64,000 nucleotides of DNA from Haplodiscus bocki (Eukaryota), in NCBI GenBank assembly GCA_965655095.1, contig OZ296656.1, forward strand, positions 71,176,001-71,240,000. Direction: 5' to 3'. Made by a program: the position numbers and the translations under genes. How positions within the stretch are numbered: the stretch's first letter is position 1; each line of letters starts with the position of its first letter. A model generated the notes under the pieces. That model saw nothing but the letters and a program-made list of their open reading frames with translations. It had not been told where the DNA came from and made no database searches. Below are positions 26,908 to 56,469 of the stretch, piece after piece.

Positions 26908-26924
26908 AGCCTAATTGTTGTGAT
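26908..26924 (+). repeat. Junction/target 17-mer AGCCTAATTGTTGTGAT, copy 1 (left array boundary)
   Basis: Exact match; preceded by unique flank TAGTTCGCTTTT. Confidence 0.95.
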
Positions 26925-27161
26925 ACTGCTACAGATAAAGATAGCTGTTTGAGCTTGAATCTTGCTTATCGTGACCATATTGCCTGGAGTCTGATTTTTC
27001 AGGATTTCCGGTTACAGTTTTACCATTTCTTTGTGGTGGAAAACATAATCATTCGAAGCTTTACCTCATTGCCTTTCTTGAATCTTTGAACCCGATTCTT
27101 ACTTACATTGCTTCTCGGCTAGCACTTAGTGCTTCCTCTCTTCATTATTCTGGAACGACCA

Positions 27162-28511: not shown

Positions 28512-28538
28512 TTTTAGTCTTTGCCTTTTATTTCTTTT

Positions 28539-31500
28539 ATGATGAATGTTTTTTCCTTAAATTGTCGAGGTCTGAAAGACCATAGACGTCTTCAAACTAT
28601 TGTCAATAACTGCATACGAAAACTTTCAGACCTCGACAATCTTTGCATGTGCTTGCAAGAAACTAAGATTTCTAACCTAAGTAATAACCATCTAAAAATC
28701 CTGGCGCACTATCATCTTTCCTATATTCTATATCCTGCTGATGGTCAATCAGGAGGACTCCTCACGATTTTTCCAAAACATTGTACAGTGCTAGGGACAC
28801 ATAAGTCACCTAACACAATAAGTATCCACTTTTCTCAACATACTTTCACATTAACAAACATCTACATCAAACCGACTGACTACCACCTTCAACAATTTCT
28901 ATCAGACATTCTTGTCATCGAGCAATTTCATTGTGAAACTCACATTCTATGTGGTGATTTCAATGCATTACCATCAGCTGACTGCACTTCCAGCTGCCAC
29001 GTTGCAAATAATGATTTTCGACTTCTTAGATATCATCGTATTCTTGACATCCTTCATAATCTTCAGGTGGTACGAGTGGAACCTCACTCATCAATGGCGA
29101 AATTCACACATTTTGACAAGAGAACTAGCTCTGCTAGTCAGATTGATCACTTCTTTACTAGCCAACCCCACTATGTATATAACACAACAAAAATCTCCTT
29201 TTCCGATCATGCTCTTCTTTCTCTAGAAATTTCGAATGTAATTATGACAAGTTCCAGTTACTGGAAACTTAATGACAATGTATTGGTCCATCATGACTAT
29301 ATCACAAGCATCATTTTCGACACTCTGCACTCCTCTCACAATTCCAATAATTTCAATGTACAACATTATGATCGAGTTAAAACCAAAATGAGAGACCATC
29401 TTCGTGCTTTATGCATCTTCTTGCATAAGCAAGCGCTTCATGAAGAGCGATACTTGAATGCCGAAATTTTAAAGCTTGAACATCAAATCTCCAATAATGA
29501 CGTTGACCCTGTTCTGATTAAACAGTTGTCCACTTTAAACTCGCAACTCATGCACTATCAGGGTATGAAAGCGAAAAAAGACTTTAAACAGATCAAACAC
29601 TATTTTACCGATTGTCATCATGGCGACTCACATTCGGTCAAAAAACTTATTTGCTCGCGTCGGCAAAAATCTAACATTGAGTCTCTTGACTTGCCAGATG
29701 GCTCTACCACATCCGACATTGACAACATCTTCTATGAATTTCATCACCACTTTTCTCAACGATTCACACAACCGATCCATACAACTTCCCAACTCTCTGA
29801 CATTGAAAACCTCTTACAACCTTTTCTTAGCACACATTCGAGCGCAATACAAGCTAACATAGCTCAGAATACTCATAACTCGCAGGTAACAGAACAGGAA
29901 GTGGAAGAGGCAATTAAAAAACTTAACTCAGATAGTGCTCCAGGACTAGATGGTTTAACATCTAATTTTTACAAAGCTCATGCAAACTTTTTTACTCCAT
30001 ACTTAACTAATATTTTTAACTTAATGATTTCACATAACTGGGTTCCTGAATCCTTCACACGAACGGTGATTAAGTTAATACCGAAAAAACCGGTTTCGCG
30101 TACGGTCGAGGACTATCGTCCGATTACCCTTATTAACACCGATCAGAAAATTCTCTCGCATCTTCTCGCTAATCGCCTAAAACGATCCTTGACCACTCTC
30201 ATTGGTCCTCACCAAACTGCGTACCTTCCCCAACGGTCAATTCATTCCTCGCTTACCCACGTCAATTTAAACTTAGAATACCTCACTGAGGAGGATTGTC
30301 TAGTTGCCTGTGACTTCAGTAAAGCTTTTGATAAACTCGACCGAACCTATCTTTTTGCTCTCCTACAGCAAATTGGTCTCCATCCAACCACTCTCGGTCT
30401 CATCCAACTCATGTATCACCATACTGATGCTTTTCTTGATATCAACGGTTCGCTATCTCCAGTTGTTAACATAACTAGTGGTGTCCGTCAAGGATGTCCA
30501 CTTTCCTCACTTCTCTTTATTCTTGGCCTCGAACCGTTCTTATTTCATCTCCAACGTAACACCGCCATCCAATCATCGAGTCCTTTCAAAATCATAGCTT
30601 ATGCCGATGATATTACATGTTGTCTTAAAATCAACAGCCTCCAATATCTCTTCGATACTATCAATATTTTCTCGTCGGTCACTAACCTGTATCTGAATCA
30701 ACAGAAAACTGAGATCTTATGTTCCGGCTCACTCCCAAGTGGCTTCCTATCGGTTCCCGCTGTCAAAATCTTAGGTGTTCAGTTTTCAATAAATAACTCA
30801 GCGATTCAACTGAATTCAGCAATCCTGCAGGCAAACAAATCACGGCTTTTCTGTAATCCATATAATACGTTTCTCGCTCGCGCCAAAAACGTTGAGACTT
30901 TGTTATGCAAAAACTCATTCATCAGGTTCGCCATAAATATGTATTGAAAACACAGCTAGAAAGGATTGACAATATCTTTGTTGATTCAATCTGGTTAGGA
31001 CGTAAACATAATATGAAGAAAACGGTTCTCCAAAAACCGTGGGCCTCCATGGGAATTGGTCTTAAAAATTTTACGCAGGTTATCACTGCGGCCAAAACTA
31101 TTGACTACAAGAACTATTTCTACTCGAATCCTACCAGTAATCAATACCGCCTCTTTCGTAATTCGAAACTTTTTTCTAACATGAGACGCTTACTGCGAAC
31201 CTTCAACTGTACACTCAGTTTAGATAATACCTCTCAAATACTTCTCCGTCGATCATCTCAAGTCCTAGTTCTTACTCCACTGACGCGTATTCGCACGGTA
31301 TATCGGTTTCTTAGCTCCACAAATACGCATGATTCTCTATTGCGTCTAACCCAAATAGCGTCTCGCCTCAATTACCCACCCGATCAGATCTTTATGTTTT
31401 TGCGGCGCTTATGGAAACATAAATCGTATGCAGCGTTTGAGAAAAACTATCTCTATCAATTTTTCATGAACTGCTACATGGATAAAACTGTCAAATTTGC

Positions 31501-31783
31501 ACATGGATGGACAGATACTCCTTTCTGTTGTTTCTGTGGCTCTGCCGACGAAACCTTCCACCATCTTTTATCGGAATGTCCGAATATTCCGCATCTGAAC
31601 TTCTTTCCCACAGTAGGTCATCCGCAACTCAACTTCCACCTTCCCAACGACTTTTATCCTTTTAAACGACTCATTGCTCTCCTTATTTGTTCATGGAGCA
31701 ACGACTCACGCAAATTTGCAAAATACTTCATTAACTGTGTGAAACTCAGGCACCCAACCATAAGTTTAAATACTAATCTTTAA
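28539..31783 (+). pseudogene. E1 ORF2 (APE endonuclease + reverse transcriptase + CCHC), 1-nt frameshift near 30900
   Basis: FSLNCRGL, LQET, GDFN, IDHFF, SDH, WKLN, APGLDG, YRPITLINTDQK, DFSKAFD, GVRQGCPLS, YADD, CCFC..ETFHHLLSEC. GAGACTTTG here versus GAGACTTTTG in E7/E8; could be a sequencing error. Confidence 0.88.
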
Positions 31784-31971
31784 GAATGTTAACCTAAGCT
31801 TTCACCATAACCAAGTTTGAATTGTAACCAAGCCTTGTCTGAATTGTAAATACCTTACTCTTAATATAACTAATTTCTGTAAATAATTTCTGTAACTAAT
31901 CATTTGTGTAACTAATCCTTTGTGTAACCAATCATTTGTATAAAGAAACTTCAATGAATTAATTCTTTAAA

Positions 31972-31988
31972 AGCCTAATTGTTGTGAT
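31972..31988 (+). repeat. Junction 17-mer copy 2
   Basis: Exact; preceded by AATTCTTTAAA. Confidence 0.95.
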
Positions 31989-32142
31989 ATTGCTGTGCGA
32001 TTTTGCTTTCGTCAATTCGAACTAGCTTTTACATCACGGTTTCTGCAGTCATTGCAGCTAAACTCTGTGATTCATCGCCTTTACGTTGAATAACGTTGTT
32101 ATTAAACTTACTGTGTATTGATATTACATAATTCATTACATA

Positions 32143-35100
32143 ATGCCAAATTTTCTCAACCACCCACATGTAACGCAAACTTTCCCGAAATATCCATTCT
32201 CTTCTCAAAACAATGCAATTCAACAAACAACATCAACTCTAAATCATCCCCCAAATAGGGGCTATATTCCTCCAGCGGAAAGACTGAGGCTGGCCGCGTT
32301 AGCGGAAGAAATCAACAATCCAAACCCGCAAAACTTCAACCAAAAAGACTTTCCCAACCTCCAAGCCGAGGGACACGGTCCAAGCCAAATCTGCAGCATT
32401 ACTACACCCTCTACAAAAGACGTCCAAGGCAAATCTGATTCTCCGCATGCATCCGAAATGACAAAGAATTCAACAACACCCAACACAGTAACAGAACAGA
32501 ACAAAGAAGTTGCAGCAAATAACTCTTCAAACCCAAATAACTCTTCAGGCCCCAATACAAGCTCCGCGTCAGCTCCGACTCCTGAGTGTATTCAAAACCC
32601 AAACGGAATCGCCCAAACAGATTCCAATACGAATTGCTACAGATCAGCTCTTGGCGTCCAATCTCTACCAGACATACAAAGGATTCTGAAAATGAAGATT
32701 ATCCCCCCTTTTAGAAAAGAACACTTTGAAAATGCTGCTGTATTAGAACGTGAAATTTCAAGAGCGTACTCAGAAATCCTTTTACCTTTTCATCCAAGAC
32801 ACCGTCCTTACATAACTATCTCAAGAACTTTTGAAAAACGAAACAACAAATCGCTCCATACATTACTAGTGACTGCCCCCCAAGAAGCAGAACAAGATGT
32901 CGAAAACATCAAAATCAATGGGCTCCAAATTATGGGGCGAACGGTTTTCCCAACCGGGGAGGACTTCTACCAAATAAGAACATCACAATATCCAAGGAAA
33001 GTTTGGGTACGAATTACTAATTTACCGTATCTCTGCAATGATGTCTCACTAATGGAAATGCTGAACCTACCAAAGCAAATCCAACCTCTCGGGCCCCTCC
33101 AAAGGGAAACCATAAACACTGAATATGGCCAAATCCACAGTGGCAAGGCAAGAATCCAGGTCTCTGTGCCAGATGCCGAATCCATAAACAAACTGAGAGA
33201 GTGGTCCTTTCTAAAAAACGGCCTTGAAATTACACAATGGTGTGACATCCCCATCTACATGTCTGCACCAAGTCTTCATCAATGCACAGCCTGCAAAACC
33301 GAGGGCAGACTCCACGTCGGTCACGATATTCTGTGGTGCAGAATAAACAGAAACAAAATTGATCAAAATGTTACAACACCACCCCAAACCACTGAAGACG
33401 AATCAACTCCAATTGCCATTGAAGAGGACAATATTGCCAGAACCCCCGAAGACCACAATAACAACGGAACTGATCAACAGCAAGGCCAACATGGAACGTC
33501 AGCAGACATACAAAGTGAGGCGGAAGTAGAGAGTGAAAAAGAAGAAAGCGAACCAGAAGAGGAGCAATGGGTAAACAACACTTCTAAAAACAAAAATAAC
33601 TCTGGTATCAAAAGACCCAACCCCCCTTCTGACACATCAGGCACCCCAAGAAAGACCTCCAACAACAAGTTCCAAATCCTTGGCAACTCTTCAGGCGATG
33701 AGACTCCAAATAACAAAGAAAACAAGAAACAAAAAGATACTCAACACACCCGTGTCCAAAAGAAAAAAAACAAAAAACTGTCGATAATGGTGAGAATGGA
33801 TAAAACCTTTGACTTATTCTCCTTTAATGTTAGAGGTTTAGCCTCTCAAAAGGCCAAACTTATCGAGATCTGCAACCTTACTAAAAAACTAAGTAAAAAC
33901 AAAAAATACTTTGTGTTGCTTCAAGAAACAAAACTCGAAAAAATGAAGGAGGAACTTAATAAAATCTTAGAATATCACAATCTGGAGTATGTTATGACTC
34001 CGGCCTATCAAAACTCAGGAGGTTTACTGATCCTTTTCCCCAAAAACTCAAACATCGAAGTACTTGGCAAGACACGATGTTCATTAGTAGTTTTTGATAA
34101 AGAATCCAAAATCGTCATAATGAATATTTACATAAATCCTAAAGATTATTCCCTAGAAATGCTTAAAGCATCAATAGAAGAGCTAAAATTGACACATGAT
34201 CATCAAATAATAATGGCAGGTGACCTCAACTTTATCAACCCTTCGTATACGTCCTCAAACAACATCAAACCAAAATCGATCATAAAACCAAATGACATAC
34301 GAATATTGAGATATAAAAAATTTGTACCTGTCAAATCCAGCCTTCTACTAATAGACCTAGCTCTTCTATTGCAAAACATAGGCCCCACCCATGTTGACAA
34401 AAGACTTGGGAATCATAGTCGTATCGACTACATTTTTAGCAATATAACGAAATTTTCCGTAGATAGCCATAAACTAGATCTTATACCATTTACCTATTCT
34501 GATCACAAAGGCCTACATTTATATGAACTGAATCACACTGAAATCATCCAGCCTCTATGGAAACTAGACAACAATGTGCTCGAACGATCAGAATCAGTAA
34601 ATGATATTCTCCAACATGCAAAAACTGCTAGTAGCAAATTTGGAAACATTGTGTCTTGCCATGACATTTTCAAAGCCAAAGTGAGAGACTGTCTTAAAAC
34701 TCTCAGTGTGAATATCAAACGCTCTAAAGAAGCCGAAATACTTGATATTCAGAATAGGATCACAAAAATTGAAAAAATTTTGCAAAATGCTCAAAATGTA
34801 ACCCTCCCAGAATCTCGTGAAAAACAGTGGAAAAACCTATCTGAACTGGAGCAAAAACTTCAGAAAATAAAAAATATAGAAAACAACAAAGTTGCTAAGC
34901 AAATCAAAGGATTCTTCCGTGAAGCCAACGAAGGCAACCCAAAAATGATAAAACTTTTGGCAAAAAATATAGCCTTAGATAAAGAAATCAAAAAAATCGA
35001 AAAACAAGATGGCTCCTTAACTGAGGACCCCAATGAGATTATCGATGAATTTTTCAACTTTTATAAAACAGTGAGTCAACCAAAATTTGGACAGTCGGAA

Positions 35101-37092
35101 AACATCTCAAAAACTCAACAAAAATACATTGACCGATTTTTTCGCCAAAAACGTAAAGCCATAAAAGATATACAAAAAAACTTCCCAGAAACAACTGAGT
35201 CAGATACAATAACAGAATTTGAAGTAGAACGTGCTATCGGTAAATTAAATCAAGAAAGCGCGCCAGGCTCAGATGGTCTAACCTCGAGTTTATATGTAGC
35301 CAACAAAACTTTTTTTGTACCCTACCTTACCGATCTGTTTAATGAAATTCATACTAACAAACAAGTTCCTCCTTCATTCAAACATGCTATCATAAAAATT
35401 ATTCCAAAAAAAAATGGCTCAATCAAAGTCTCAGAATTCCGTCCTATCAGTCTCATTAACACGGACCAAAAAATTCTTTCAACTGTGCTTGCAGAAAGAA
35501 TTAAACCTAGGCTGGACATATTGCTAGGATGTCATCAAAACGCCCATCTACCAAACAGGAATATACACATAGCAATACAAAAAATCCAAACCTACGCTCA
35601 CGAAACTTCAGTAAGAGAATCTATCGTAGCCATAGACTTCAGCAAAGCCTTTGATTGCATTGAACGAAGCTATCTAAGAAAGATCATCAACCAATCACCA
35701 TTCGATGGAATCACTAAAAAACTAATTGGCCTCACATACGACAATACATCCGCATTTATTGGCATGAGAATTGGTATATCTGAAAGGTTCAAAGTCGAGA
35801 GAGGCGTCCGTCAAGGATGTCCACTATCAGCGCTGATCTTCAACCTGTGCCTAGAGCCTCTTTTACAACGAATACAAAAAACAAAACACATCAAATCCAA
35901 ACAACAAACAAAATGCATTGCTTATGCGGATGATGTTACTATAAGCCTATATAACAAATCTATTAGAAACCTCCTTTTAATTTTGCACGAATTCTATAAT
36001 GTTGCAGGCTTGGAAGTCAATCTCGCTAAAACTGAGGTGCTCTCAAAAGCACAGAGAATTTTCGGAGCAAATCAGCTAAAACGTGTAGAATCAACAAAAA
36101 TCCTAGGCATCTACATTTCGCTGAAGAAAAGCATTAACTATCAAACAAATCAAATAATCGATAACACAATAACTCACTCAGACAAATACATCCAAAAGAT
36201 GAGTTCTTTAAGAGCTAGAGCAAAAAACATAGAAACCTTCATTCTAACCAAAATAATGTTCCATTGCAGACATCTTATTCTAACGAAAAATTTTCTGAAA
36301 AAAATCAACTCTAAAATAGCTGATATGCTCTGGCTACACAAAAAACACAACGTACATAATGAAACTCTAAATCTACAACTTTCAAAAGGAGGTATCAATC
36401 TAAAAAACACAACAATTTATTACCTAGCAAACAAAATTATGAACCTAAAATTTCTAGCCTTCAACCCAAAAGAGGAACATTTCATCCAAAAGTTCAAATC
36501 TTCTGAAACCTTCAAGAAAATGGCCCTGCATCTAACCAAGCACAACATTTTCCTCAATAATTTTGCCCTAAGCCAACTAAATATCCAATATATGATGCAA
36601 TCACTAGAGCTTACTAAACAAACAACATGGAAAGATGTCTATTTCTTCCTTACGAATGCCACTATACAAGTCCCTCCTTTCAATAGAGTAGGAATTAGTG
36701 CAATAAAACAAAATGTCATGCCGGACATCCTATTTAATACACTTAAGAATCTTTGGAAAAATAAAAATCTCCAAACTTTTGACAAAAACTATCTCTACTG
36801 TTTCATCATGAATTCATATTTGGAAAAACAAGAAAAATGGCTCAAGAACCTAAGTCCCCATCCATTATGCTTCGGATGCGAAACCAAATTTGAAACATGG
36901 GATCACCTAATGTTCGAATGCCCACTAACACAACCAATCAGCAAGGCTCTTAACATAAAGAACTGGAAGGATGTCTGGCTTGACAGATCTTGCCGCTCAC
37001 AAAAATTTCTAGTCTCCCTTCTTTTAGCATCGTGGACCGAAAGTTGTGGTCCATACCTACAATTTTTCTTGGACAGAGTACCGCAGGTCTGA
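32143..37092 (+). CDS. E2 ORF1-ORF2 fusion polyprotein (ORF1 domain, zinc knuckle, APE, RT, CCHC); intact
   Basis: ILKMKIIPPFRKEHF...CTAC-x9-H-x4-C...FSFNVRGL, LQET, GDLN, IDYIF, SDH, DFSKAFD, GVRQGCPLS, YADD, CFGC..ETWDHLMFEC in one frame. Confidence 0.93.
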   Translation: MPNFLNHPHVTQTFPKYPFSSQNNAIQQTTSTLNHPPNRGYIPPAERLRLAALAEEINNPNPQNFNQKDFPNLQAEGHGPSQICSITTPSTKDVQGKSDSPHASEMTKNSTTPNTVTEQNKEVAANNSSNPNNSSGPNTSSASAPTPECIQNPNGIAQTDSNTNCYRSALGVQSLPDIQRILKMKIIPPFRKEHFENAAVLEREISRAYSEILLPFHPRHRPYITISRTFEKRNNKSLHTLLVTAPQEAEQDVENIKINGLQIMGRTVFPTGEDFYQIRTSQYPRKVWVRITNLPYLCNDVSLMEMLNLPKQIQPLGPLQRETINTEYGQIHSGKARIQVSVPDAESINKLREWSFLKNGLEITQWCDIPIYMSAPSLHQCTACKTEGRLHVGHDILWCRINRNKIDQNVTTPPQTTEDESTPIAIEEDNIARTPEDHNNNGTDQQQGQHGTSADIQSEAEVESEKEESEPEEEQWVNNTSKNKNNSGIKRPNPPSDTSGTPRKTSNNKFQILGNSSGDETPNNKENKKQKDTQHTRVQKKKNKKLSIMVRMDKTFDLFSFNVRGLASQKAKLIEICNLTKKLSKNKKYFVLLQETKLEKMKEELNKILEYHNLEYVMTPAYQNSGGLLILFPKNSNIEVLGKTRCSLVVFDKESKIVIMNIYINPKDYSLEMLKASIEELKLTHDHQIIMAGDLNFINPSYTSSNNIKPKSIIKPNDIRILRYKKFVPVKSSLLLIDLALLLQNIGPTHVDKRLGNHSRIDYIFSNITKFSVDSHKLDLIPFTYSDHKGLHLYELNHTEIIQPLWKLDNNVLERSESVNDILQHAKTASSKFGNIVSCHDIFKAKVRDCLKTLSVNIKRSKEAEILDIQNRITKIEKILQNAQNVTLPESREKQWKNLSELEQKLQKIKNIENNKVAKQIKGFFREANEGNPKMIKLLAKNIALDKEIKKIEKQDGSLTEDPNEIIDEFFNFYKTVSQPKFGQSENISKTQQKYIDRFFRQKRKAIKDIQKNFPETTESDTITEFEVERAIGKLNQESAPGSDGLTSSLYVANKTFFVPYLTDLFNEIHTNKQVPPSFKHAIIKIIPKKNGSIKVSEFRPISLINTDQKILSTVLAERIKPRLDILLGCHQNAHLPNRNIHIAIQKIQTYAHETSVRESIVAIDFSKAFDCIERSYLRKIINQSPFDGITKKLIGLTYDNTSAFIGMRIGISERFKVERGVRQGCPLSALIFNLCLEPLLQRIQKTKHIKSKQQTKCIAYADDVTISLYNKSIRNLLLILHEFYNVAGLEVNLAKTEVLSKAQRIFGANQLKRVESTKILGIYISLKKSINYQTNQIIDNTITHSDKYIQKMSSLRARAKNIETFILTKIMFHCRHLILTKNFLKKINSKIADMLWLHKKHNVHNETLNLQLSKGGINLKNTTIYYLANKIMNLKFLAFNPKEEHFIQKFKSSETFKKMALHLTKHNIFLNNFALSQLNIQYMMQSLELTKQTTWKDVYFFLTNATIQVPPFNRVGISAIKQNVMPDILFNTLKNLWKNKNLQTFDKNYLYCFIMNSYLEKQEKWLKNLSPHPLCFGCETKFETWDHLMFECPLTQPISKALNIKNWKDVWLDRSCRSQKFLVSLLLASWTESCGPYLQFFLDRVPQV

Positions 37093-37342
37093 GAAAAAAA
37101 AAGAACAAAAAGGAAATTAAATAAAAAAAAAACAAAACAAAACAAAAAACAAAAAAAAAAACTAACAACAAAATACACTACACTACAACACTCATATACA
37201 TGTTGCGGATCTCAAGTGCTTTTTATATTACTTCTCAGTTTTCATTGTTAAATTTGCTTTTACATTATTTTATGTTTATTTTATTTTATTCTTTATTTAA
37301 CAATTTGTTTACATATATACAAGATATAATACATTTTTGAAA

Positions 37343-37359
37343 AGCCTAATTGTTGTGAT
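37343..37359 (+). repeat. Junction 17-mer copy 3
   Basis: Exact; preceded by CATTTTTGAAA. Confidence 0.95.
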
Positions 37360-37522
37360 AACGCCTTTTGATTGTGATAGCTATTACTCGCTTGAATCCT
37401 TGGCTCGCTATTAATTGGCCGTCTCCTGTTGACTCAGGATTCTTGTCAATTTTCACCACATACTATTGTGGTGAAATTATCATTTGGAAATTGGAATTTA
37501 GTTCGCTTTTAGCTTCACAGGA

Positions 37523-38350
37523 ATGGCTAAAGCCGAAGTAATTGTGAAAGATGAAGATACAGAACAAAGACTTCGAAATTGGGCCATGGAATCATACCAA
37601 CTATTCAGAAACTGCCGGAATGCTATATTTCAAGCTTGTGCCTTCAGTATGCTTGAATGCTCTAACTGTAAAGGTGCAAATCTTCAATTTTGTCACCACC
37701 CAAGCCGCTGCAACATTATTTTTGACAATCAACGAAAAGAAAACGAATGTGAAACAAATATTGCAGAAAAAAACAACGCTGATTACGTTATGGAAATCTC
37801 TGGAAATGTAAAACATGGGATTATGGAAAATGATCAGGAAACTATTCTAAGCAATGAAAACTCACCAACAACCAATGCAGAAGAGATGGACAGCAATTCA
37901 GACGAAGAAAGCGACCTAGAAAGTGAAAACGAACCCGCTGAAAAAGCTCAAAAGGCAGAAATTGAAACTACAAATGACGAAATTCAAAAAACATCCGCAA
38001 ATGCTAACCCTAAACAAAATGTGGTACCTTCTACTGCTGTAGTACTTGTTTATGATGCTAAAGCCTTGTGTTCAAAGATACTTCCAACTCAATCTGTCAT
38101 CAAGGACAATCCTCAAATTGAAAAGAAGTTTACAGAAACAAATCCGAAAAACTTTTCAATCGGTGATTTAACATACAATTTGGATTTTAAGCGTATCAAA
38201 ACTAATGATATGAGGAATCTTTTCAAAACACACGCCTGCAGGAAGAAAAACTCGCAAGAAATATACAATAGACACGAAGAAAAGGAAAAAATAATCGGAA
38301 GACTTGATATTTTCTACAATCAAAAAAAACGACAGACTTTATTGTACTAA
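37523..38350 (+). CDS. E3 truncated ORF1-like protein (275 aa)
   Basis: (FTG)MAKAEVIVKDEDTEQRLRNW aligns by eye with ORF1 (FTG)RA..I.....E..LR.W. It has CSNC-x8-H-x4-C and then an acidic region. Confidence 0.65.
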   Translation: MAKAEVIVKDEDTEQRLRNWAMESYQLFRNCRNAIFQACAFSMLECSNCKGANLQFCHHPSRCNIIFDNQRKENECETNIAEKNNADYVMEISGNVKHGIMENDQETILSNENSPTTNAEEMDSNSDEESDLESENEPAEKAQKAEIETTNDEIQKTSANANPKQNVVPSTAVVLVYDAKALCSKILPTQSVIKDNPQIEKKFTETNPKNFSIGDLTYNLDFKRIKTNDMRNLFKTHACRKKNSQEIYNRHEEKEKIIGRLDIFYNQKKRQTLLY

Positions 38351-38691
38351 TCTATATAATGATGTAAAACTTAGATTACAATTCTTTGAACGCTCAAAAC
38401 CCCCTCCTATGACAACTCGCAATTAGTCTTTTTGACCTCACAATTAAAATATCAACCCTATATAACATCTACCAATACCCAAAAAAAAAATTTGCTTTCT
38501 CGCAAACTATCTCGTAGTCCACACTACTATTTTCATTATATTTCATGACCAGTTCCATCTCCATCTTTCTATATAAAAAAAATCATCAGGCTTTTTGGAG
38601 CTAAACTACACTACAAAAATACATAAATTTTTTTCATAATTACTTACTCATTGTACTTGTACATTTATAGTCTCCAAATTTATTCTTTAAA

Positions 38692-38708
38692 AGCCTAATT
38701 GTTGTGAT
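38692..38708 (+). repeat. Junction 17-mer copy 4
   Basis: Exact; preceded by TATTCTTTAAA, followed by AAAC. Confidence 0.95.
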
Positions 38709-38911
38709 AAACATGTTTTTGAACAATGAAAGCTAACCCTCTAGATCTGTAAATCCAGTCGTGAGAAGTTGTTCGATCCATCGAACTCTACGGAGCCTGC
38801 TGGCTAAGTTTGTTACTTGTAACGAACGATAAACCGAGGTAGCTTCTCCCAATCTAAGTGCTGCTAGTTTGTAGAGAGCTAGCCATCAGGCACTGGGTTG
38901 TAACAGAACAT

Positions 38912-39573
38912 CTCTCATTGGTCCTCACCAAACTGCGTACCTTCCCCAACGGTCATTTCATTCCTCGCTTACCCACGTCAATTTAAACTTAGAATACCTC
39001 ACTGAGGAGGATTGTCTAGTTGCCTGTGACTTCAGTAAAGCTTTTGATAAACTCGACCGAACCTATCTTTTTGCTCTCCTACAGCAAATTGGTCTCCATC
39101 CAACCACTCTCGGTCTCATCCAACTCATGTATCACCATACTGATGCTTTTCTTGATATCAACGGTTCGCTATCTCCAGTTGTTAACATAACTAGTGGTGT
39201 CCGTCAAGGATGTCCACTTTCCTCACTTCTCTTTATTCTTGGCCTCGAACCGTTCTTATTTCATCTCCAACGTAACACCGCCATCCAATCATCGAGTCCT
39301 TTCAAAATCATAGCTTATGCCGATGATATTACATGTTGTCTTAAAATCAACAGCCTCCAATATCTCTTCGATACTATCAATATTTTCTCGTCGGTCACTA
39401 ACCTGTATCTGAATCAACAGAAAACTGAGATCTTATGTTCCGGCTCACTCCCAAGTGGCTTCCTATCGGTTCCCGCTGTCAAAATCTTAGGTGTTCAGTT
39501 TTCAATAAATAACTCAGCGATTCAACTGAATTCAGCAATCCTGCAGGCAAACAAATCACGGCTTTTCTGTAAT
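38912..39573 (+). pseudogene. RT-core fragment copied from an E1-type element
   Basis: 662 bp near-identical to 30196-30857; contains DFSKAFD, GVRQGCPLS and YADD codons. Confidence 0.9.
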
Positions 39574-39700
39574 GTGCTTTTTATATTACTTCTCAGTTTT
39601 CATTGTTAAATTTGCTTTTACATTATTTTATGTTTATTTTATTTTATTCTTTATTTAACAATTTGTTTACATATATACAAGATATAATACATTTTTGAAA

Positions 39701-39717
39701 AGCCTAATTGTTGTGAT
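39701..39717 (+). repeat. Junction 17-mer copy 5 (duplicate of copy 3)
   Basis: Exact. Confidence 0.95.
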
Positions 39718-39880
39718 AACGCCTTTTGATTGTGATAGCTATTACTCGCTTGAATCCTTGGCTCGCTATTAATTGGCCGTCTCCTGTTGACTCAGGATTC
39801 TTGTCAATTTTCACCACATACTATTGTGGTGAAATTATCATTTGGAAATTGGAATTTAGTTCACTTTTAGCTTCACAGGA

Positions 39881-40708
39881 ATGGCTAAAGCCGAAGTAAT
39901 TGTGAAAGATGAAGATACAGAACAAAGACTTCGAAATTGGGCCATGGAATCATACCAACTATTCAGAAACTGCCGGAATGCTATATTTCAAGCTTGTGCC
40001 TTCAGTATGCTTGAATTCTCTAACTGTAAAGCTGCAAATCTTCAATTTTGTCACCACCCAAGCCGCTGCAACATTATTTTTGACAATCAACGAAAAGAAA
40101 ACGAATGTGAAACAAATATTGCAGAAAAAAACAACGCTGATTACGTTATGGAAATCTCTGGAAATGTAAAACATGGGATTATGGAAAATGATCAGGAAAC
40201 TATTCTAAGCAATGAAAACTCACCAACAACCAATGCAGAAGAGATGGACAGCAATTCAGACGAAGAAAGCGACCTAGAAAGTGAAAACGAACCCGCTGAA
40301 AAAGCTCAAAAGGCAGAAATTGAAACTACAAATGACGAAATTCAAAAAACATCCGCAAATGCTAACCCTAAACAAAATGTGGTACCTTCTACTGCTGTAG
40401 TACTTGTTTATGATGCTAAAGCCTTGTGTTCAAAGATACTTCCAACTCAATCTGTCATCAAGGACAATCCTCAAATTGAAAAGAAGTTTACAGAAACAAA
40501 TCCGAAAAACTTTTCAATCGGTGATTTAACATACAATTTGGATTTTAAGCGTATCAAAACTAATGATATGAGGAATCTTTTCAAAACACACGCCTGCAGG
40601 AAGAAAAACTCGCAAGAAATATACAATAGACACGAAGAAGTGGAAAAAATAATCGGAAGACTTGATATTTTCTACAATCAAAAAAAACGACAGACTTTAT
40701 TGTACTAA
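39881..40708 (+). CDS. E5 truncated ORF1-like protein (275 aa; first knuckle Cys changed to Phe)
   Basis: Differs from the E3 ORF at three residues (ECSNC>EFSNC, G>A, K>V). Confidence 0.6.
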   Translation: MAKAEVIVKDEDTEQRLRNWAMESYQLFRNCRNAIFQACAFSMLEFSNCKAANLQFCHHPSRCNIIFDNQRKENECETNIAEKNNADYVMEISGNVKHGIMENDQETILSNENSPTTNAEEMDSNSDEESDLESENEPAEKAQKAEIETTNDEIQKTSANANPKQNVVPSTAVVLVYDAKALCSKILPTQSVIKDNPQIEKKFTETNPKNFSIGDLTYNLDFKRIKTNDMRNLFKTHACRKKNSQEIYNRHEEVEKIIGRLDIFYNQKKRQTLLY

Positions 40709-41050
40709 TCTATATAATGATGTAAAACTTAGATTACAATTCTTTGAACGCTCAAAACCCCCTCCTATGACAACTCGCAATTAGTCTTTTTGACCTCACA
40801 ATTAAAATATCAACCCTATATAACATCTACCAATACCCAAAAAAAAAAAATTTGCTTTCTCGCAAACTATCTCGTAGTCCACACTACTACTTTCATTATA
40901 TTTCATGACCAGTTCCATCTCCATCTTTCTATATAAAAAAATCATCAGGCTTTTTGGAGCTAAACTACACTACAAAAATACATAAATTTTTTTCATAATT
41001 ACTTACTCATTGTACTTGTACATTTATAGTCTCCAAATTTATTCTTTAAA

Positions 41051-41067
41051 AGCCTAATTGTTGTGAT
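41051..41067 (+). repeat. Junction 17-mer copy 6 (duplicate of copy 4)
   Basis: Exact. Confidence 0.95.
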
Positions 41068-41439
41068 AAACATGTTTTTGAACAATGAAAGCTAACCCTC
41101 TAGATCTGTAAATCCAGTCGTGAGAAGTTGTTCGATCCATCGAACTCTACGGAGCCTGCTGGCTAAGTTTGTTACTTGTAACGAACGATAAACCGAGGTA
41201 GCTTCTCCCAATCTAAGTGCTGCTAGTTTGTAGAGAGCTAGCCATCAGGCACTGGGTTGTAACAGAACGGGCTGGTGACTTTCAGGAAGTCCCTCAAAAC
41301 CCCTGAGAGTCATTACCTGTTGTGCGGTGCAGTTGGCAGTACCAAACGACAGTTCCCGATAAGAATCCTTTTCCCCCCTTCTTCACTTTGATCAACTATT
41401 CTGTTCTAGCAATCTTCCCCTATCCCTAGAACAATCGTT

Positions 41440-42873
41440 TTGAAGAGAAATGCCAGTTCAAAGACAAAACTTTCTGAAAAAAATCTAGGACCCCAGGTCA
41501 GATTTCCATCCTATGAACCTCAAACGCCTTTCATAAGCTTGGAAGAATTTAATAAACCAGAAAACTCAAATCCAAAAGAAAATGACCCACAATTAGCAAC
41601 AACTCAGAACAGCAAGTCTACTACAAACGATCCTCCACTTGATGAGTCTCACTCTCCTCAATCTGATAATAACCCAGCCGCAGATGTTCCTCCACCTCCT
41701 GTGGGATCAGAATCAGACCAACAACAAAATGCCAGTGTTCAACTCGGGATTGCAACTAGACCTACGTTCAGTGATAAAGTGAAACAGACGAACAACAAAG
41801 AGTACCGGAGGCAGAGAATCTTACGAATGAAAGTGGTACCACCGTTCCGAAAGGAACACTTCATGAATCGACAGAAATTGGAGGCAGACGTGAATTCTGC
41901 AATAAGAGAAATTCTGTGCCTATTCCAACCAAGGTTCAGACCATTGGTCACCATCTCACGAACTAACATAAATCAAAATAACCGCAATACCCAGATACTA
42001 ATGGTAACTGCACCCGAAGAAGCGGAGGAAGATTTAGCGAGAGCAAAGTTGAATGGTATCCAGATTATGGGAAAGACAGTGTTTCCCACAGGGGAAGAAT
42101 TTTGGACGTACGTGCCGTCAGAATACCCTAAAAGAGCATTACTCAGAATCAATAATCTGCCGATACTGTGCTCCGATGATGAATTAGAAGAACTCATGCA
42201 ATTGCCAGATGGCATAGAACTAGCAGGCGATCTCCTACGGGAATCGAATGAGACTGAGTTAGGTAGATGTTTCACAGGACGAGCAATGGTACCCATTGTA
42301 ATACCAACAAAGGAACATGAGAGTCTGGTCAAAAAATGGTCATTGCTCAAAAACTCGGAAAACATTACCACGTGGAACGAAGTTCCCATTTACATGAGTG
42401 TCCCCCGCCTGCATAAATGCAGGTTATGTGAGCAGGAGGGCAGGAGGCAGGTGATCGGACATGACGAAAAATGGTGCAGAATCGTGAGAAACCCGATGAA
42501 AAATGTAATCAGCGACCGCGTAAATGACCAGCAATGTGAACAGAATGAATCAACAGAAACAAATGTCAATGAGAAAGAGGTAGAAGATGTAAACCTGGCA
42601 GATCCTGAAGGTAGAAAAGAAGTGGAAGTAGCTGTGGAAAATGAAGACAACTCGAAAGAAACTGACGCAGTGGAGGAAGGGTTCTCAAATTCAGACGAGA
42701 GTGAGCAAAACAACGAAGAAGACTGGAGCAAACCCAACCAGAAAAAGAGGTTCAACAAGAAGAAACGAAAAAGGACGGACTTGAGTACCACAACATCTGG
42801 CTCGAGAGCAACTGCAACTTCTCCTAAAAAGGGTCCAGAAGCAAAACATCGTAACTTAAACTCTAATGGCTAG
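41440..42873 (+). CDS. E6 ORF1 (probable true start ATG 41450 with a frameshift in the following A-run)
   Basis: ILRMKVVPPFRKEHF, GIQIMGKTVFP, CRLC-x10-H-x4-C, basic tail. The out-of-frame ATG gives MPVQRQNFLKK, resembling the E2 start MPNFLN. Confidence 0.8.
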   Translation: MKRNASSKTKLSEKNLGPQVRFPSYEPQTPFISLEEFNKPENSNPKENDPQLATTQNSKSTTNDPPLDESHSPQSDNNPAADVPPPPVGSESDQQQNASVQLGIATRPTFSDKVKQTNNKEYRRQRILRMKVVPPFRKEHFMNRQKLEADVNSAIREILCLFQPRFRPLVTISRTNINQNNRNTQILMVTAPEEAEEDLARAKLNGIQIMGKTVFPTGEEFWTYVPSEYPKRALLRINNLPILCSDDELEELMQLPDGIELAGDLLRESNETELGRCFTGRAMVPIVIPTKEHESLVKKWSLLKNSENITTWNEVPIYMSVPRLHKCRLCEQEGRRQVIGHDEKWCRIVRNPMKNVISDRVNDQQCEQNESTETNVNEKEVEDVNLADPEGRKEVEVAVENEDNSKETDAVEEGFSNSDESEQNNEEDWSKPNQKKRFNKKKRKRTDLSTTTSGSRATATSPKKGPEAKHRNLNSNG

Positions 42874-45800
42874 TTTCTCTTTTTCGCAGCCTGTAGACTG
42901 TTTTTCTTGTAATGTTAGGGGTCTGAAAAATCCGGAACGTCTAGTAGAAATTTGTGAACTTGTTAAGAACAAAAGCAAAAGTAAAAATAATATAATAACT
43001 ATACAGGAAACAAAAATACAAAATCTGAAAGAGGAACATAAAAGAGTCTTGAAAAACTTTAAACTTGCTTATGATATTGTACCTGCCAGAGGAACTGCTG
43101 GAGGGCTTCTGACACTATTTCCAGAATCGCTAACCGTAAAACCAGTAATAAAAACTGATAATGTGCTAGCTCTTGCTCTGAATCAAAATGGTCCAATAAT
43201 TTGTAATGTTTATATCAACCCAAAAGATTACAATATGAAGGCCTTCGAAATTGCATGTGAAGACCTTCGTGAACTATCAGATGGCGGAATTCTCTTTATG
43301 GGTGACTTTAATGCCATCGATCCAAACCAACATTGCGATAGAGAAAAAATGTTCCCAAAAAACAACGATATCAGAATTACCAGATATCTGCGAATTTCTC
43401 GGTTTTTAAACTTTTTCAATGCCTTCGATCTAGGAAAAGCCTTAAGTATGATGGAAGCCACTCATTTTGATAAAAGAACAAGAACTAGCACTAGAATTGA
43501 CTATTTTTTTGGAAACATCAATGTTCAAAATGTTAAAATGTTTTTACACTCAACCTCTTTCTCAGATCATAAATGCCTTCATCTTATCCATTTTAAGAAT
43601 GAAAATCAAATCGGAAACGGTTCGTGGAAGTTGAACAATGAGATTTTGCTAAAAGAATCTGAGATAAAAGGCATAATACTGAACTGTTTTGAAAAAACCT
43701 CAGATATGGCTAGAAAATATGATATATATAAGTCAAGACTTAGAGACATCCTGCTGCGTCTGCTATGCATTCGGAATGCCAGAGAAAAGAAATCTTTGGG
43801 ATTAAAACTGGAGAGAGAAGTTGATATTTCAACTAAAAACCTGCAATCCAAAAAAGTTTGTTTGAAAAAAGATCTGGAAGATTATGAAGACAAAGTAGAA
43901 AAACTGAAAACTTTTCAGGCTACCAGAGCAAAAGTGATTCTTCATTCTATAAAAAAATTTTATATGGATGTTAATGAAGGTGATCCAAAATCAACAAAAT
44001 CAACGTTGAGAATTTTTGCAGAAAAACGCGAAATAAGAAAAGTCATCAACTCAGAAGGTGTGCCCATTGAAGATGAAAACGACATTCTTGATGAATTTGC
44101 CAGATACTTTGAAAAATGCTACAAACGGCCAAACGATAGCAAAAAAATGGATCAAAAACTGTATGTAAGGAAGAAACACCTTCACAAATTTTTTAAAAAG
44201 AACAGAACGATACTTGAAGACTATAAGCTTTAGAATGAAATCCAAAATGATGACGACAAGCCAATAACAGAATTTGAAGTCGAAAAAGCAGTTATGAAGC
44301 TGAATAGCAAAAGTGCTCCTGGATCGGATGGTCTAACCTCTGACCTATATAAAACCCAAAAAGAAGTGTTTATACCCATTTTGACGGAATTATTTAAAAA
44401 GATCCATGAGACTCAATATGTTCCTCCTTCTTTTAAACAAGCGATCATAAAACTGATACCAAAAAAAGCCCAACAATGTAAACATAGAAAATTTCCGTCC
44501 AATCAGTCTGATCAACACTGATCAGAAAATTCTATCACACATCATAGCAGAAAGGCTGCGCAAGGTCCTAAATGTGTTAATTGGGAGGCATCAAACTGCT
44601 CACTTGACAAACAGGAACATTAATACATCATTAATGAAACTACAAAAGTTCGCAACAGAAATGTCAAAAAGAGAAGGTATAGTAGCACTTGATTTTAATA
44701 AAGCTTTTGACAAAGTAAATAGGGAATACTTAATGGAGATGATAGGACGCCTTCCTTTAGATCGTCAAACAAAAAATATCATTAACAAGACTTATGAGGA
44801 GACAATTGCTTTGATAAATATCAGAGGCTCTTTCTCCCTTCCTTTCAAAACTGAAACCGGTGTTCGACAAGGCTGTCCCATGTCAGCACTAATGCTCAAT
44901 CTTGCAATCGAACCGCTACTACAACGTATTCAAAACACCAACTTTATCAAATCCTCTCAAGAAATTAAATCGATAGCCTTCGCCGATGATATCTCTATAT
45001 GTATGTACACAAGCTCGATCGGAAATCTCTTTGCAATTCTCAAAGACTTTGCGGATATGTCTGATTTAACAGTTAATATCGACAAAAGTAAAACGCTCAC
45101 AGCTGGCAAAATGTATAAAGAGGAAAAATGGAAGCTACAAAAAGTCAAACGAGCAAAAATATTAGGTTTATATATAAATGTTGGCGGAAAACTAGATAAT
45201 GAAACAAAAAATGAAATGATGAGTACAGCGTTGAAAACCTCCCAGTTTATGGGACCCTCAGTTTCCTTGTATGCTAGAGCAAAAAATATTGAGACCTTTA
45301 TCCTTCGCAAACTGATATATTCTCTGAGGCACTATCCAAAAGCCAAATTGTTCATGAAAAAACTGAATGCGGTAATCATTAATCAATTATGGTTAGACAA
45401 AAAACACAATGTTAATCAAGAAATCGTCAACACACCACATCAACAAGGGGGTATAGGTTTGAGAAATCTACAAAAATTAATCTTGACAGCCAAATTGATG
45501 GATCTAAAAAACTTAACGTTCTGTGAACTTGAGAAGTCCTTTGTTCCCACGTACAAAAGCTCAAAAGCTTTCAGTAATCTGTTGAATGATCTGAAACACG
45601 ATGGAATTGAAAAATTAGAGTTCGACATTAGAAGTTTATCTTTTAATTTCTTCTTCCAAAGCTTTGAAGTGACTGAAAAAACAACCTTCAAAGAAATATA
45701 TAAATTCTTAATAGAATCAATCATCGCAATTCCATGTTTCAAAAATATTAACATGAGTGCAATGAAACTCAAGATCTCTCCGAATATAATAATGGACTTC

Positions 45801-46136
45801 CTCAAAAAGCTTTGGAAGAACAGGAGATTAAAATCGTTTGATAAAAACATCCTGTATAACTTTCTAATGAACGCATATTTTGAAAAACTAGAAAAATGGT
45901 TAAAACATTTAGTCCCGCATCCACTATGCTTCTCATGCGGTGAAAAATTTGAAACGTGGGATCACCTAATGTTTGAATGCCGAGATTTTTCGGAAATTCG
46001 TATTTTACTAAACCTAAAAAACTGGTCAGATGTCTTTACAGACACGACTGGCCTAGCACCTAAATTTCTAGTAGCTATAGTACTATCATCATGGACAGAG
46101 GAAAAAGGTAACTATTTGAAATTTCTAACGAAATAA
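42866..46136 (+). pseudogene. E6 ORF2 (APE-RT-CCHC) with in-frame TAG at 44231 and a frameshift near 44465
   Basis: FSCNVRGL, IQET, GDFN, IDYFF, SDH, APGSDG, DFNKAFD, GVRQGCPMS, FADD, CFSC..ETWDHLMFEC split over three ORFs. Confidence 0.9.
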
Positions 46137-46303
46137 GACAACAGTACTAAACTACATCTTCCATTTCAGACCCCTATACTTTTTCTCCTATCACATCTAT
46201 TTTATGACATTTATTGAATATTTATATACTTATGTACTTTATTTATATCTAAAATGTTTGATGTACTTGTAGATTTAGATTTGTTTAGAATAAATTCTTT
46301 AGA

Positions 46304-46320
46304 AGCCTAATTGTTGTGAT
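46304..46320 (+). repeat. Junction 17-mer copy 7
   Basis: Exact; preceded by AATTCTTTAGA. Confidence 0.95.
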
Positions 46321-46563
46321 ATCCGCTAAAGATAGTGATAGCTTTTTGCTGGAATCTTTGGAAACACAGACTTGCGTCACAGCAGCACAGAATTGCTGTT
46401 GTTTTCACATATTCTTGTGGAGTTACAATCTCATCAAATCAATCTTTAGTGTTTCTCTCGTTATTTTGACGTCGTTATCTCAAGCCTTCATTACTCTGCT
46501 CACCTCTCTTGTTGAGCCTTGCTACTATCGGTTAGCACTAAGTGCTTTCTCGACCTTATCTTC

Positions 46564-47895: not shown

Positions 47896-47922
47896 TTTTA
47901 GTCCTTGGTTTTTATCTATTTT

Positions 47923-51372: not shown

Positions 51373-51389
51373 AGCCTAATTGTTGTGAT
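51373..51389 (+). repeat. Junction 17-mer copy 8
   Basis: Exact; preceded by AATTCTTTAAA. Confidence 0.95.
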
Positions 51390-52989: not shown

Positions 52990-53014
52990 TTCTTAACTTT
53001 CTCCTATTTTTGTA

Positions 53015-56452: not shown

Positions 56453-56469
56453 AGCCTAATTGTTGTGAT
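56453..56469 (+). repeat. Junction 17-mer copy 9
   Basis: Exact; preceded by AATTCTTTAAA. Confidence 0.95.

What the first reader, a model, noticed from the sequence alone, without database searches (positions are those of the whole stretch)
38692..38712. The target 17-mer may be the 5' part of a spliced-leader (SL) exon, implying SL-gene-targeting APE retrotransposons
Seen: after the 17-mer, units continue to match a common string for different lengths (+0 in E9/E10, +A in E1/E2/E7/E8, +AA in E3/E5, +AAAC in E4/E6). This fits variable-length TSDs of a target reading AGCCTAATTGTTGTGATAAAC.... Recollection, not verified here: the trans-splicing leader reported for acoel flatworms begins GCCTAATTGTTGTGATAAAC. 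Known: the SL-targeting retrotransposons NeSL (nematodes) and CRE/SLACS/CZAR (trypanosomatids) use restriction-like endonucleases. Inference: an APE-bearing L1/Tx1 group may have reached the same niche independently, gaining the SL promoter and an SL-like capped 5' end.
Basis: partly seen in the sequence, partly recalled or inferred. Interest (0 to 1): 0.88.

Follow-up and report, generated by a model that had tools for sequence, protein, structure and literature searches.

The report
LINEs that insert into spliced-leader genes
The repeated 17-mer is the first 17 bases of an acoel worm's spliced-leader RNA gene, and the window holds a head-to-tail pile-up of L1-type jumping genes that insert only at that spot, a niche previously known only for LINEs with a different kind of endonuclease.

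Summary
Observation confirmed; interpretation largely supported.

- **The motif.** GCCTAATTGTTGTGAT occurs 10 times in the window (0.07 expected), always at unit junctions. It is nt 1-16 of the 31-nt spliced leader published for Symsagittifera roscoffensis.
- **The target gene.** The genome holds 673 copies of SL exon+GT, mostly in an SL-5S tandem array 1.2 Mb downstream on the same chromosome.
- **Left flank.** Window 26487-26925 is 74% identical over 453 bp to the SL gene upstream region.
- **Insertion anatomy.** 21 sites read element 3' end (AATTCTTTAAAA) + complete SL exon + GTAAGT. 23 sites read SL promoter + SL nt 1-17 + element. These pair up as single insertions. Five more single insertions lie in SL-5S repeats of three other assemblies.
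- **The elements.** They encode two RRMs, APE, an L1-like RT and a C-terminal domain. Lineages sharing the site are only 28-50% identical in protein, so the array grew by repeated insertion.
- **Relatives.** Clade members sit in U2 and next to U1 snRNA genes.

Not tested: expression (no RNA runs), use of the SL promoter, and Tx1-versus-L1 placement. This array's right end could not be fetched. The scan reached the same reading earlier on adjacent DNA (s1-364264).

The parts
26487..26908 (+). Relic upstream/promoter region of an SL RNA gene, forming the left flank of the pile-up. Shares the motifs TGCAAGCTGTTATTT (about -70), CGATCCAA and GCTTTTA|+1 with intact SL genes.
   Evidence: blastn gives 74.4% over 453 bp to the region upstream of SL genes in the C9 SL-5S array. 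Alignment A2. The same promoter variant recurs once, at C9:71255316, 52.4 kb downstream.
26909..31972 (+). Unit E1: SL nt 1-17 plus a lineage-A LINE with a broken reading frame (pieces at 27129-28511, 28521-30947, 30905-31783). Ends ...AATTCTTTAAAA.
31973..37343 (+). Unit E2: SL nt 1-17 plus a lineage-B LINE with one intact 1649-aa ORF (32143-37092). Domains: ORF1-like RRM region fused in frame, APE at aa 560-790, RT at 1087-1323, zf-RVT-like C-terminus. Ends ...ATTTTTGAAAA.
   Evidence: Pfam. PDB best hit is L1 ORF2p, 2.9e-51. 28-50% aa identity to the other lineages.
37344..38692 (+). Unit E3: SL nt 1-16 + AA, then a short 1.35-kb lineage-D derivative with a 275-aa ORF and no RT.
38692..38712 (+). 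The flagged 21-mer, AGCCTAATTGTTGTGATAAAC. One A from the element tail or position -1, then SL nt 1-20. It is the junction between E3 and E4.
38693..39701 (+). Unit E4: chimeric 1.0-kb unit. First 217 bp equal the start of E6, then 662 bp are 99.8% identical to E1 3288-3949, then an E2-type 3' end.
39702..41051 (+). Unit E5: a duplicate of E3 (99.3%).
41052..46304 (+). Unit E6: SL nt 1-20 plus a lineage-C LINE with its ORF in three pieces (41440-42873, 42866-44233, 44574-46136). 35-50% aa identity to E2.
46305..51373 (+). Unit E7: SL nt 1-17 plus a lineage-A LINE. ORF1 (46519-47895) and ORF2 (47905-51012, 1035 aa) are in the same frame, separated by one stop. 80% aa identity to P0016, which sits in an SL gene in another assembly.
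51374..56453 (+). Unit E8: SL nt 1-17 plus a lineage-A LINE, frame broken.
56454..61541 (+). Unit E9: SL nt 1-16 plus a diverged lineage-A relative (76% nt identity to E1/E7/E8), frame broken.
61542..64000 (+). Unit E10 (start only): SL nt 1-16 plus a further diverged relative. It continues 2603 bp beyond the window, and the pile-up goes on to about C9:71.254 Mb.

Best explanation
The window holds the left end and first ten units of a pile-up of about 51 kb. The units are site-specific non-LTR retrotransposons of the L1 group (ORF1 with two RRMs, APE endonuclease, L1-like RT), and their only target is the 5' end of the spliced-leader RNA gene.

Shown:
- The 3' junction of every element is exactly at SL nt 1.
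- The 5' junction lies at SL nt 15-20, most often nt 17.
- One insertion therefore gives: SL promoter - SL nt 1-17 - element - short A-tail - complete SL gene (exon, intron, then 5S rRNA).

Inferred from the target-primed reverse transcription model for APE LINEs:
- The first (bottom-strand) nick falls at the transcription start, between -2/-1 or -1/+1.
- The second nick falls 15-17 nt downstream.
- SL nt 1-17 is therefore a target-site duplication.

Because the downstream copy is again a full target, further insertions stack head to tail, separated only by the 16-20-nt duplication. That is what the window shows.

Inferred and untested:
- The upstream copy leaves the external snRNA-type SL promoter driving the first element. 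Its RNA would then start with SL nt 1-17.
- Each insertion silences one of about 650 SL gene copies, which the host can tolerate.
For: - **SL identity.** Identical to the published leader. 673 genomic copies of SL exon+GT. The SL RNA folds into the canonical shape, z = -4.6. A 5S rRNA gene is linked in each repeat.
- **Left flank.** Homologous to the SL upstream region.
- **Insertions in this genome.** 21 right ends carry a complete SL gene and 23 left ends carry the SL promoter. They pair at 0.8, 1.6 or 5.5 kb. Intact 1090-aa ORF2s lie between them on C235, C299, C300 and C764; the C9:72.82 Mb pair encloses a partial ORF2 with one stop.
- **Other assemblies.** Five single insertions in SL-5S repeats of three other assemblies (L063, L064, L069, L072, L073). 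One assembly has a promoter type absent from this genome.
- **Lineage diversity.** Units in one array are 28-50% identical in protein, so the insertions were independent.
- **Distribution.** Junction-type 16-mers cluster at SL loci. Dispersed non-AAAC 16-mers are mostly point-mutated retroposed SL copies.
- **Enzymes.** APE and RT catalytic motifs are invariant in 18 relatives.
- **Nick position.** A 3'-truncated unit still joins exactly at SL nt 1 (L061:4112). This fits reverse transcription being primed at that nick.
Against: - No RNA data could be laid. Transcription from the SL promoter and current activity are therefore not shown.
- This array's own right end (about C9:71.250-71.255 Mb) could not be fetched. 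No exact 'AAA + SL31 + G' lies there, so its terminal SL copy must be mutated or absent.
- Some relatives lie on other chromosomes away from exact SL 16-mers. They may be other-target lineages or off-target copies.
- E3-E6 show that segmental duplication also shaped the array.
- Only the leftmost unit of a pile-up sits next to a promoter.
Confidence: 0.9

Rival explanations
1. Same target, different mechanism. The flanking SL pieces are carried by the RNA template, which would be a read-through co-transcript running SL1-17 - element - downstream SL. They would then be placed by annealing to the target, as proposed for R1/R2. Both DNA nicks would lie near SL nt 17, and the 'TSD' would not come from staggered nicks.
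For: - The 5' extension (+0, +A, +AA, +AAAC) tracks element lineage rather than varying freely.
- Several 5' UTRs hold a second partial SL copy (TTGTGATA, TGATAAA, AATTGTTGT) just after the junction. 6 of 17 have 7 nt or more, against 1.6 expected. This hints that templates start inside the SL.
- The 3' junction is perfectly precise in all lineages.
Against: - A 3'-truncated unit is still joined exactly at SL nt 1 (L061:4112). That is expected if the nick is at nt 1, not at nt 17.
- The U2-targeting relative makes an ordinary 7-bp TSD.
- A 15-17-bp TSD is normal for L1-type elements.
- The shuffle test ignores shared descent, so it is weak.
Confidence: 0.2
2. The SL piece at each 5' end comes from trans-splicing. 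Element transcripts would receive the leader and be retrotransposed with it, as seems to happen for other LINE families in this genome. There would be no site specificity.
For: About 600 dispersed genomic copies of the full 31-nt leader sit at the 5' ends of diverse repeated sequences. Other readers of this scan noted SL-capped LINEs.
Against: - Only nt 1-15/20 of the 31-nt leader are present, never the AG-terminated full exon.
- The flank upstream of the first unit is the SL promoter.
- The flank downstream of single insertions is the SL gene with its GTAAGT intron and 5S rRNA, which mature mRNA never carries.
Confidence: 0.02
3. One chance insertion into an SL gene was later amplified by unequal crossing-over or segmental duplication. 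The repeated 17-mer would then be just a copied junction.
For: E3/E5 and the starts of E4/E6 are 99-100% identical duplicates. Arrays of near-identical short units with 2.0-3.3-kb spacing occur on C10, and identical 1.6-kb insertions recur in the C9 SL array.
Against: - Neighbouring units belong to lineages with 28-50% aa identity and unrelated UTRs.
- The same junction is found in different SL repeat types and in three other assemblies.
- A tree puts SL-inserted elements in at least two deep clades.
Confidence: 0.03

Closest known systems
Keno and other target-specific Tx1-clade LINEs (APE type; Keno inserts in U2 snRNA genes of frogs, fish, lancelet and hydra; PMC4494074, PMC4640811)
   Same: An APE endonuclease N-terminal to an L1-like RT, with an RRM-type ORF1. 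Strict insertion into a multicopy Sm-class small-RNA gene transcribed from an external promoter. Short TSD. A relative in the same well-supported clade sits in a U2 snRNA tandem array with a 7-bp TSD at U2 nt 19-25 (L070).
   Different: The target is the SL RNA gene, which held literature does not list for any APE LINE. The TSD starts exactly at the transcription start. Pile-ups exceed 50 kb. Grouping with reference Tx1/Keno sequences could not be tested, because no labelled reference was reachable.
NeSL (nematodes) and CRE/SLACS/CZAR (trypanosomatids): SL-exon-specific non-LTR retrotransposons
   Same: The same ecological niche: insertion into the spliced-leader exon of tandem SL RNA genes. 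The host tolerates it because the gene is highly repeated.
   Different: Those elements carry a restriction-like endonuclease C-terminal to the RT and belong to early-branching groups (PMC4640811). The elements here carry an APE N-terminal to an L1-like RT. The niche was therefore reached independently.
R1/R2 in rDNA
   Same: Several old, diverged lineages coexist at one conserved site of a tandem multicopy RNA gene. A few percent of units are occupied, and the elements probably depend on the host gene's promoter.
   Different: The target and clade differ. R2 uses an RLE and a self-cleaving ribozyme, and R1 belongs to another APE clade. No ribozyme was found in the window by Rfam.

Membership tests
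Spliced-leader RNA gene (identity of the target) | The exon sequence is the leader found on mRNA 5' ends | tested here: met
   Identical to nt 1-31 of the leader reconstructed from the S. roscoffensis transcriptome (PMC9911081). I could not lay RNA reads myself.
Spliced-leader RNA gene (identity of the target) | GT donor after the exon, a hairpin spanning the donor, an Sm-like single-stranded site, a 3' hairpin, and a multicopy tandem arrangement | tested here: met
   SL31|GTAAGT occurs in 673 copies. MFE -27.2 kcal/mol, z = -4.64, two hairpins flanking UUUUAUUUGA. Tandem repeats of 0.9-3.5 kb each carry a 5S rRNA gene.
Site-specific non-LTR retrotransposon | Independent insertions at the same nucleotide position, with target sequence on both sides | tested here: met
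   21 right ends and 23 left ends in this genome. Five single insertions in three other assemblies. Diverged lineages share the site.
L1 group (L1/Tx1) of non-LTR retrotransposons | APE endonuclease N-terminal to the RT, with an L1-like RT and C-terminal domain | tested here: met
   Pfam Exo_endo_phos at aa 560-788, RVT_1 at 1087-1323 and a weak zf-RVT. PDB best hits are L1 ORF2p at 2.9e-51, against R2 at 5e-19. Catalytic E, D/N, D/H and the ADD motif are invariant.
L1 group (L1/Tx1) of non-LTR retrotransposons | ORF1 protein with RRM domain(s) and a zinc knuckle | tested here: met
   AF2 model with pLDDT 75.6. Foldseek top hits are tandem RRM1-2 proteins (4e-6, probability 1.00). Invariant C..C..H..C follows the RRMs.
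Tx1 clade / Keno | RT phylogeny groups the element with reference Tx1/Keno sequences | not testable with these tools
   No labelled Tx1 or Keno protein could be retrieved. The nearest named outgroups are unlabelled fish, frog and coral ORF2s, one annotated 'LINE-1 ORF2'. Plant L1 is more distant.
NeSL / CRE (SL-specific RLE elements) | A PD-(D/E)xK restriction-like endonuclease C-terminal to the RT | tested here: not met
   The endonuclease is an APE placed N-terminal to the RT, and no RLE domain was found. The elements work like NeSL/CRE in target choice but are not members.

The most novel reading that the evidence does not exclude
Placing the target-site duplication exactly at the SL transcription start may be an adaptation rather than an accident. 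Each element would capture the external snRNA-type SL promoter. Its mRNA would begin with SL nt 1-17, and in some lineages a second partial SL copy follows. Such an mRNA would mimic a trans-spliced message for capping and translation. At the same time each insertion regenerates its own target, which drives the self-extending pile-ups. The clade would then be a radiation of LINEs that parasitise promoters of Sm-class snRNA genes and switch among U1, U2 and SL.
Probability: 0.3. Interest if true: 0.72.

Novelty: new variant of a known kind. Interest (0 to 1): 0.58.

Why it matters
Spliced-leader genes were known as a retrotransposon niche only for early-branching LINEs with restriction-like endonucleases, in nematodes and trypanosomatids. 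Here an APE-bearing, L1-type clade has reached the same niche in an acoel and diversified deeply there. It builds pile-ups of 50 kb or more and has relatives in U2 and next to U1 snRNA genes.

This is a clear case of convergent target choice. It also gives a natural series for studying how APE LINEs retarget, and a practical warning for annotating SL loci and SL-bearing repeats in acoel genomes. An endonuclease/RT pair that recognises a 17-20-bp site could interest people who build site-specific insertion tools.

Tried and rejected
- **Fetching the rest of the array.** I did not try to get those letters another way.
- **Pattern searches for this array's right end.** None of the 25 places with 'AAA + exact SL31 + G' lies in C9:71.2-71.33 Mb. 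One search was spoiled by my own end anchor, which excluded the full leader. Another returned too many rows to reach C9.
- **RNA evidence.** No RNA runs are indexed. The four runs I laid are contig sets of unknown kind and say nothing about expression.
- **Apparent structural variants in those runs.** One contig joined the window-type promoter to an E3-type unit. A joint skipped E2. The first is explained by a second copy of that promoter at C9:71255316. I reject both as evidence of polymorphism.
- **Tx1 versus L1 assignment.** Two profile or sequence searches, a cluster look-up and the ESM Atlas gave no labelled Tx1 reference.
- **Rfam on the window.** No hits, so no ribozyme, 5S or snRNA.
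- **tRNA search near P0010 and other relatives.** None found.
- **Second partial SL copy in 5' UTRs.** The statistical signal is weak and confounded by shared descent. I keep it only as a lead.

Full report
**1. The observation**

Window 38692-38712 reads AGCCTAATTGTTGTGATAAAC. The 16-mer GCCTAATTGTTGTGAT occurs ten times, all on the + strand. Shuffles give 0.07 on average and none reaches ten.

The ten sites are the junctions of head-to-tail units of 1.0-5.4 kb. Nine junctions are preceded by an element 3' terminus (...AATTCTTTAAAA...ATTTTTGAAAA...TTCTTTAGAA...TTCTTTATAA). The first, at 26909, is preceded by unique sequence ending GCTTTTA.

However, E3/E5 and E4/E6 are duplicates, so +AA and +AAAC are single events.

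**2. The 17-mer is the start of the spliced leader**

- The genome (1.5 Gb) has 1500 copies of the 16-mer, and 1281 continue with AAAC.
- In 30 sampled loci the string runs on as GCCTAATTGTTGTGATAAACTTATTAAATAG and is then followed by diverse sequences.
- That 31-mer equals the trans-splicing leader reconstructed from the Symsagittifera roscoffensis transcriptome. In that species 30.2% of genes are SL trans-spliced (PMC9911081).
- 673 copies are followed by GT. Most lie in a tandem array starting at C9:72,473,736, on the same chromosome and strand as the window (C9:71,176,001-71,240,000).
- Each repeat of that array also carries a 5S rRNA gene.
- The gene reads promoter...GCTTTTA|SL exon|GTAAGTATTCC.... 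It folds into a hairpin across the donor site, a single-stranded UUUUAUUUGA stretch and a 3' hairpin (-27.2 kcal/mol, z = -4.64).

I cannot name the species. The leader is identical to that of S. roscoffensis, so the genome is that worm or a close relative.

**3. The array sits in an SL gene**

Window 26487-26925 is 74% identical over 453 bp to the region upstream of the intact SL genes. It shares TGCAAGCTGTTATTT, CGATCCAA and GCTTTTA immediately before +1.

The window-type promoter recurs once, 52.4 kb downstream, and another left end lies at C9:71,325,596. This stretch is therefore a row of relic SL genes, each filled with a LINE pile-up of 50-70 kb (junction list).

**4. Anatomy of single insertions**

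In this genome:
- 21 places read AATTCTTTAAAA + complete SL exon + GTAAGT.
- 23 places read GCTTTTA + SL nt 1-17 + non-SL sequence.
- These pair up 0.8, 1.6 or 5.5 kb apart, at C9:72.82-72.88 Mb and on unplaced contigs C235, C299, C300, C392, C734, C764 and C1304.
- Four of the 5.5-kb pairs (C235, C299, C300, C764) enclose an ORF2 of 1090 aa without stops. The C9:72.82 Mb pair encloses only a partial ORF2 match (aa 388-1086) with one stop.

In three other public assemblies, relatives of the window's proteins sit as single insertions in SL-5S tandem repeats (L063, L064, L069, L072, L073). Each has the promoter and SL nt 1-15/17 on the left. Each has the element tail followed by the whole SL gene and 5S on the right. 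The promoter type of one of these assemblies is not found in this genome, so it is probably a different genome.

The 3' junction is therefore always at SL nt 1, and the 5' junction lies at nt 15-20. SL nt 1-17 is duplicated. After an insertion, what resumes is a complete SL gene, not merely its remainder.

**5. The elements**

- E2 has an intact 1649-aa ORF with an APE domain, RVT_1 and a weak zf-RVT match.
- Its best solved relatives are L1 ORF2p (2.9e-51), far ahead of R2.
- The N-terminal (ORF1) core is conserved across the clade. It is predicted to form two tandem RRMs followed by an invariant C..C..H..C.
- APE and RT catalytic residues are invariant in 18 relatives.

The units fall into deep lineages:
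- A: E1, E7 and E8 (87-92% nt identity), with E9 and E10 at 71-78%.
- B: E2.
- C: E6.
- D: the short units E3 and E5.
- A further lineage just beyond the window, at L061:4112.

Protein identity between lineages is 28-50%. Repeated independent insertion, not copying of one unit, must have built the array. The E3-E6 block shows that local duplication happened as well.

**6. Relatives and phylogeny**

A quick maximum-likelihood tree gives a clade of 22 sequences with 100% SH-aLRT support and a long stem, which holds:
- all SL-inserted elements, in at least two deep groups;
- P0011, which sits in a U2 snRNA tandem array with a 7-bp TSD at U2 nt 19-25;
- P0017, whose 3' end abuts U1 snRNA near nt 8.

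The branching order of the U2 element and the two SL groups is unresolved. Outgroups are ORF2s of about 1250 aa from fish, frog and coral, and then plant L1.

I could not obtain a labelled Tx1 or Keno sequence. 'L1 group' is therefore shown, and 'Tx1 clade' is only plausible. Literature states that Tx1-clade members are APE elements with target preference, and that Keno inserts in U2 genes (PMC4494074; PMC4640811).

**7. Mechanism**

Applying the target-primed reverse transcription model for APE LINEs (established knowledge):
- The fixed 3' junction marks the first, bottom-strand nick at the SL transcription start.
- The variable 5' junction marks the top-strand nick 15-17 nt downstream.
- A 3'-truncated unit still joined exactly at SL nt 1 (L061:4112) supports priming at that nick.

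The downstream copy regenerates the target, which explains the head-to-tail stacks.

The upstream copy leaves the external SL promoter in front of the first element. snRNA-type promoters have no reported internal part (PMC4494074). That the element uses this promoter, and that its RNA gains any SL-like cap property, is inference only, since no RNA runs were available.

A variant mechanism is not excluded. The SL pieces could ride on a read-through RNA and be placed by annealing. The 5' extension tracks lineage, and some 5' UTRs hold a second partial SL copy (weak evidence).

**8. Rivals rejected**

- Trans-splicing as the source of the SL piece. Only nt 1-15/20 are present, and the flanks are the promoter and the intron plus 5S.
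- Pure amplification of one insertion. Lineage divergence and the independent insertions in other repeat types and other assemblies rule it out.

**9. Caveats**

- Relatives also occur on other chromosomes, not next to exact SL 16-mers. Their targets are unknown.
- The right end of this particular array was not seen.
- Most dispersed non-AAAC 16-mers are mutated retroposed leaders, not junctions.

**10. Novelty**

Held literature lists SL exons as targets only of RLE elements (CRE, NeSL). It names Keno, Utopia and Dada as the only transposons that target snRNA genes. An APE/L1-type SL-specific clade is therefore a new target for a known lifestyle.

The scan's own follow-up on adjacent DNA (s1-364264) reached the same reading. 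I reproduced it independently. I added the paired single insertions, the other assemblies, the U2 and U1 relatives and the ORF1 fold.

Noticed in passing
L001-L030 (sampled from 1281 genomic sites; e.g. G000:C1:9615177, C1:15470382): About 600 dispersed copies of the full 31-nt leader sit directly at the 5' ends of diverse sequences, and several of those sequences recur as repeat families. They look like retroposed copies of trans-spliced RNAs, including transposon RNAs. Many are preceded by AA (185 sites).
   Followed up: partly
L070:2700-7560 (assembly ERZ25074608): A relative (P0011, 35% aa identity to E2) is inserted in a U2 snRNA tandem array. The left junction is after U2 nt 25, the right junction resumes at nt 19, and the TSD is GGCTAAG.
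   Followed up: partly
L067:4287-4494 (Tara metagenome scaffold): A relative (P0017, 30% aa identity) ends ...ATATTTAAAA directly against a U1 snRNA gene at about nt 8. Held literature lists only the DNA transposon Dada-U1 as U1-specific.
   Followed up: partly
L065:2081-7594: A more distant relative (P0019) is flanked by a perfect 382-bp direct repeat. That is far longer than a normal TSD, and no snRNA or SL lies nearby.
   Followed up: no
G000:C10:82,994,653-83,096,558 (- strand); also C2:8,172,988-8,183,042: There are 34 junction 16-mers spaced mostly 2.0-3.3 kb apart, nearly all starting with SL nt 1-17 + CGGCGTTACGCTGATGGA. A second array has a 3345-bp period on C2. These appear to be large tandem arrays of short SL-headed units away from the SL-5S cluster.
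   Followed up: no
G000:C9:72,473,736 onward (L040-L060): SL-5S repeat lengths step by about 168 bp (1732, 1900, 2068, 2236, 2404, 2572 ...). This suggests a 168-bp satellite of variable copy number in the spacer.
   Followed up: no
window 37344-41268: The E3-E4 block is repeated as E5 plus the start of E6 (99.3-100% identity). E4 is a chimera of an E6 head, an E1-like RT fragment and an E2-type tail. This is either local rearrangement or an assembly duplication.
   Followed up: partly
window 32143-37092, 46519-51012, 27129-30947: ORF1 and ORF2 lie in the same frame. They are fused without a stop in E2 and separated by a single in-frame stop in E7 and E1. In another assembly (L063) they overlap in different frames.
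   Followed up: no
window 26926-26960, 37361-37385, 51391-51415, 56470-56490; L072:44-52: Several 5' UTRs carry a second partial SL copy (TTGTGATA, TGATAAA, AATTGTTGT) 5-12 nt after the junction. In lineage A this is followed by a conserved GATAGCT...TGCTTGAATC.
   Followed up: partly
window 4871-10975 (- strand): Exon-like ORFs encode AAA_5 (dynein-related) ATPase domains. They probably belong to a host gene for a large multi-AAA protein upstream of the SL relic.
   Followed up: no
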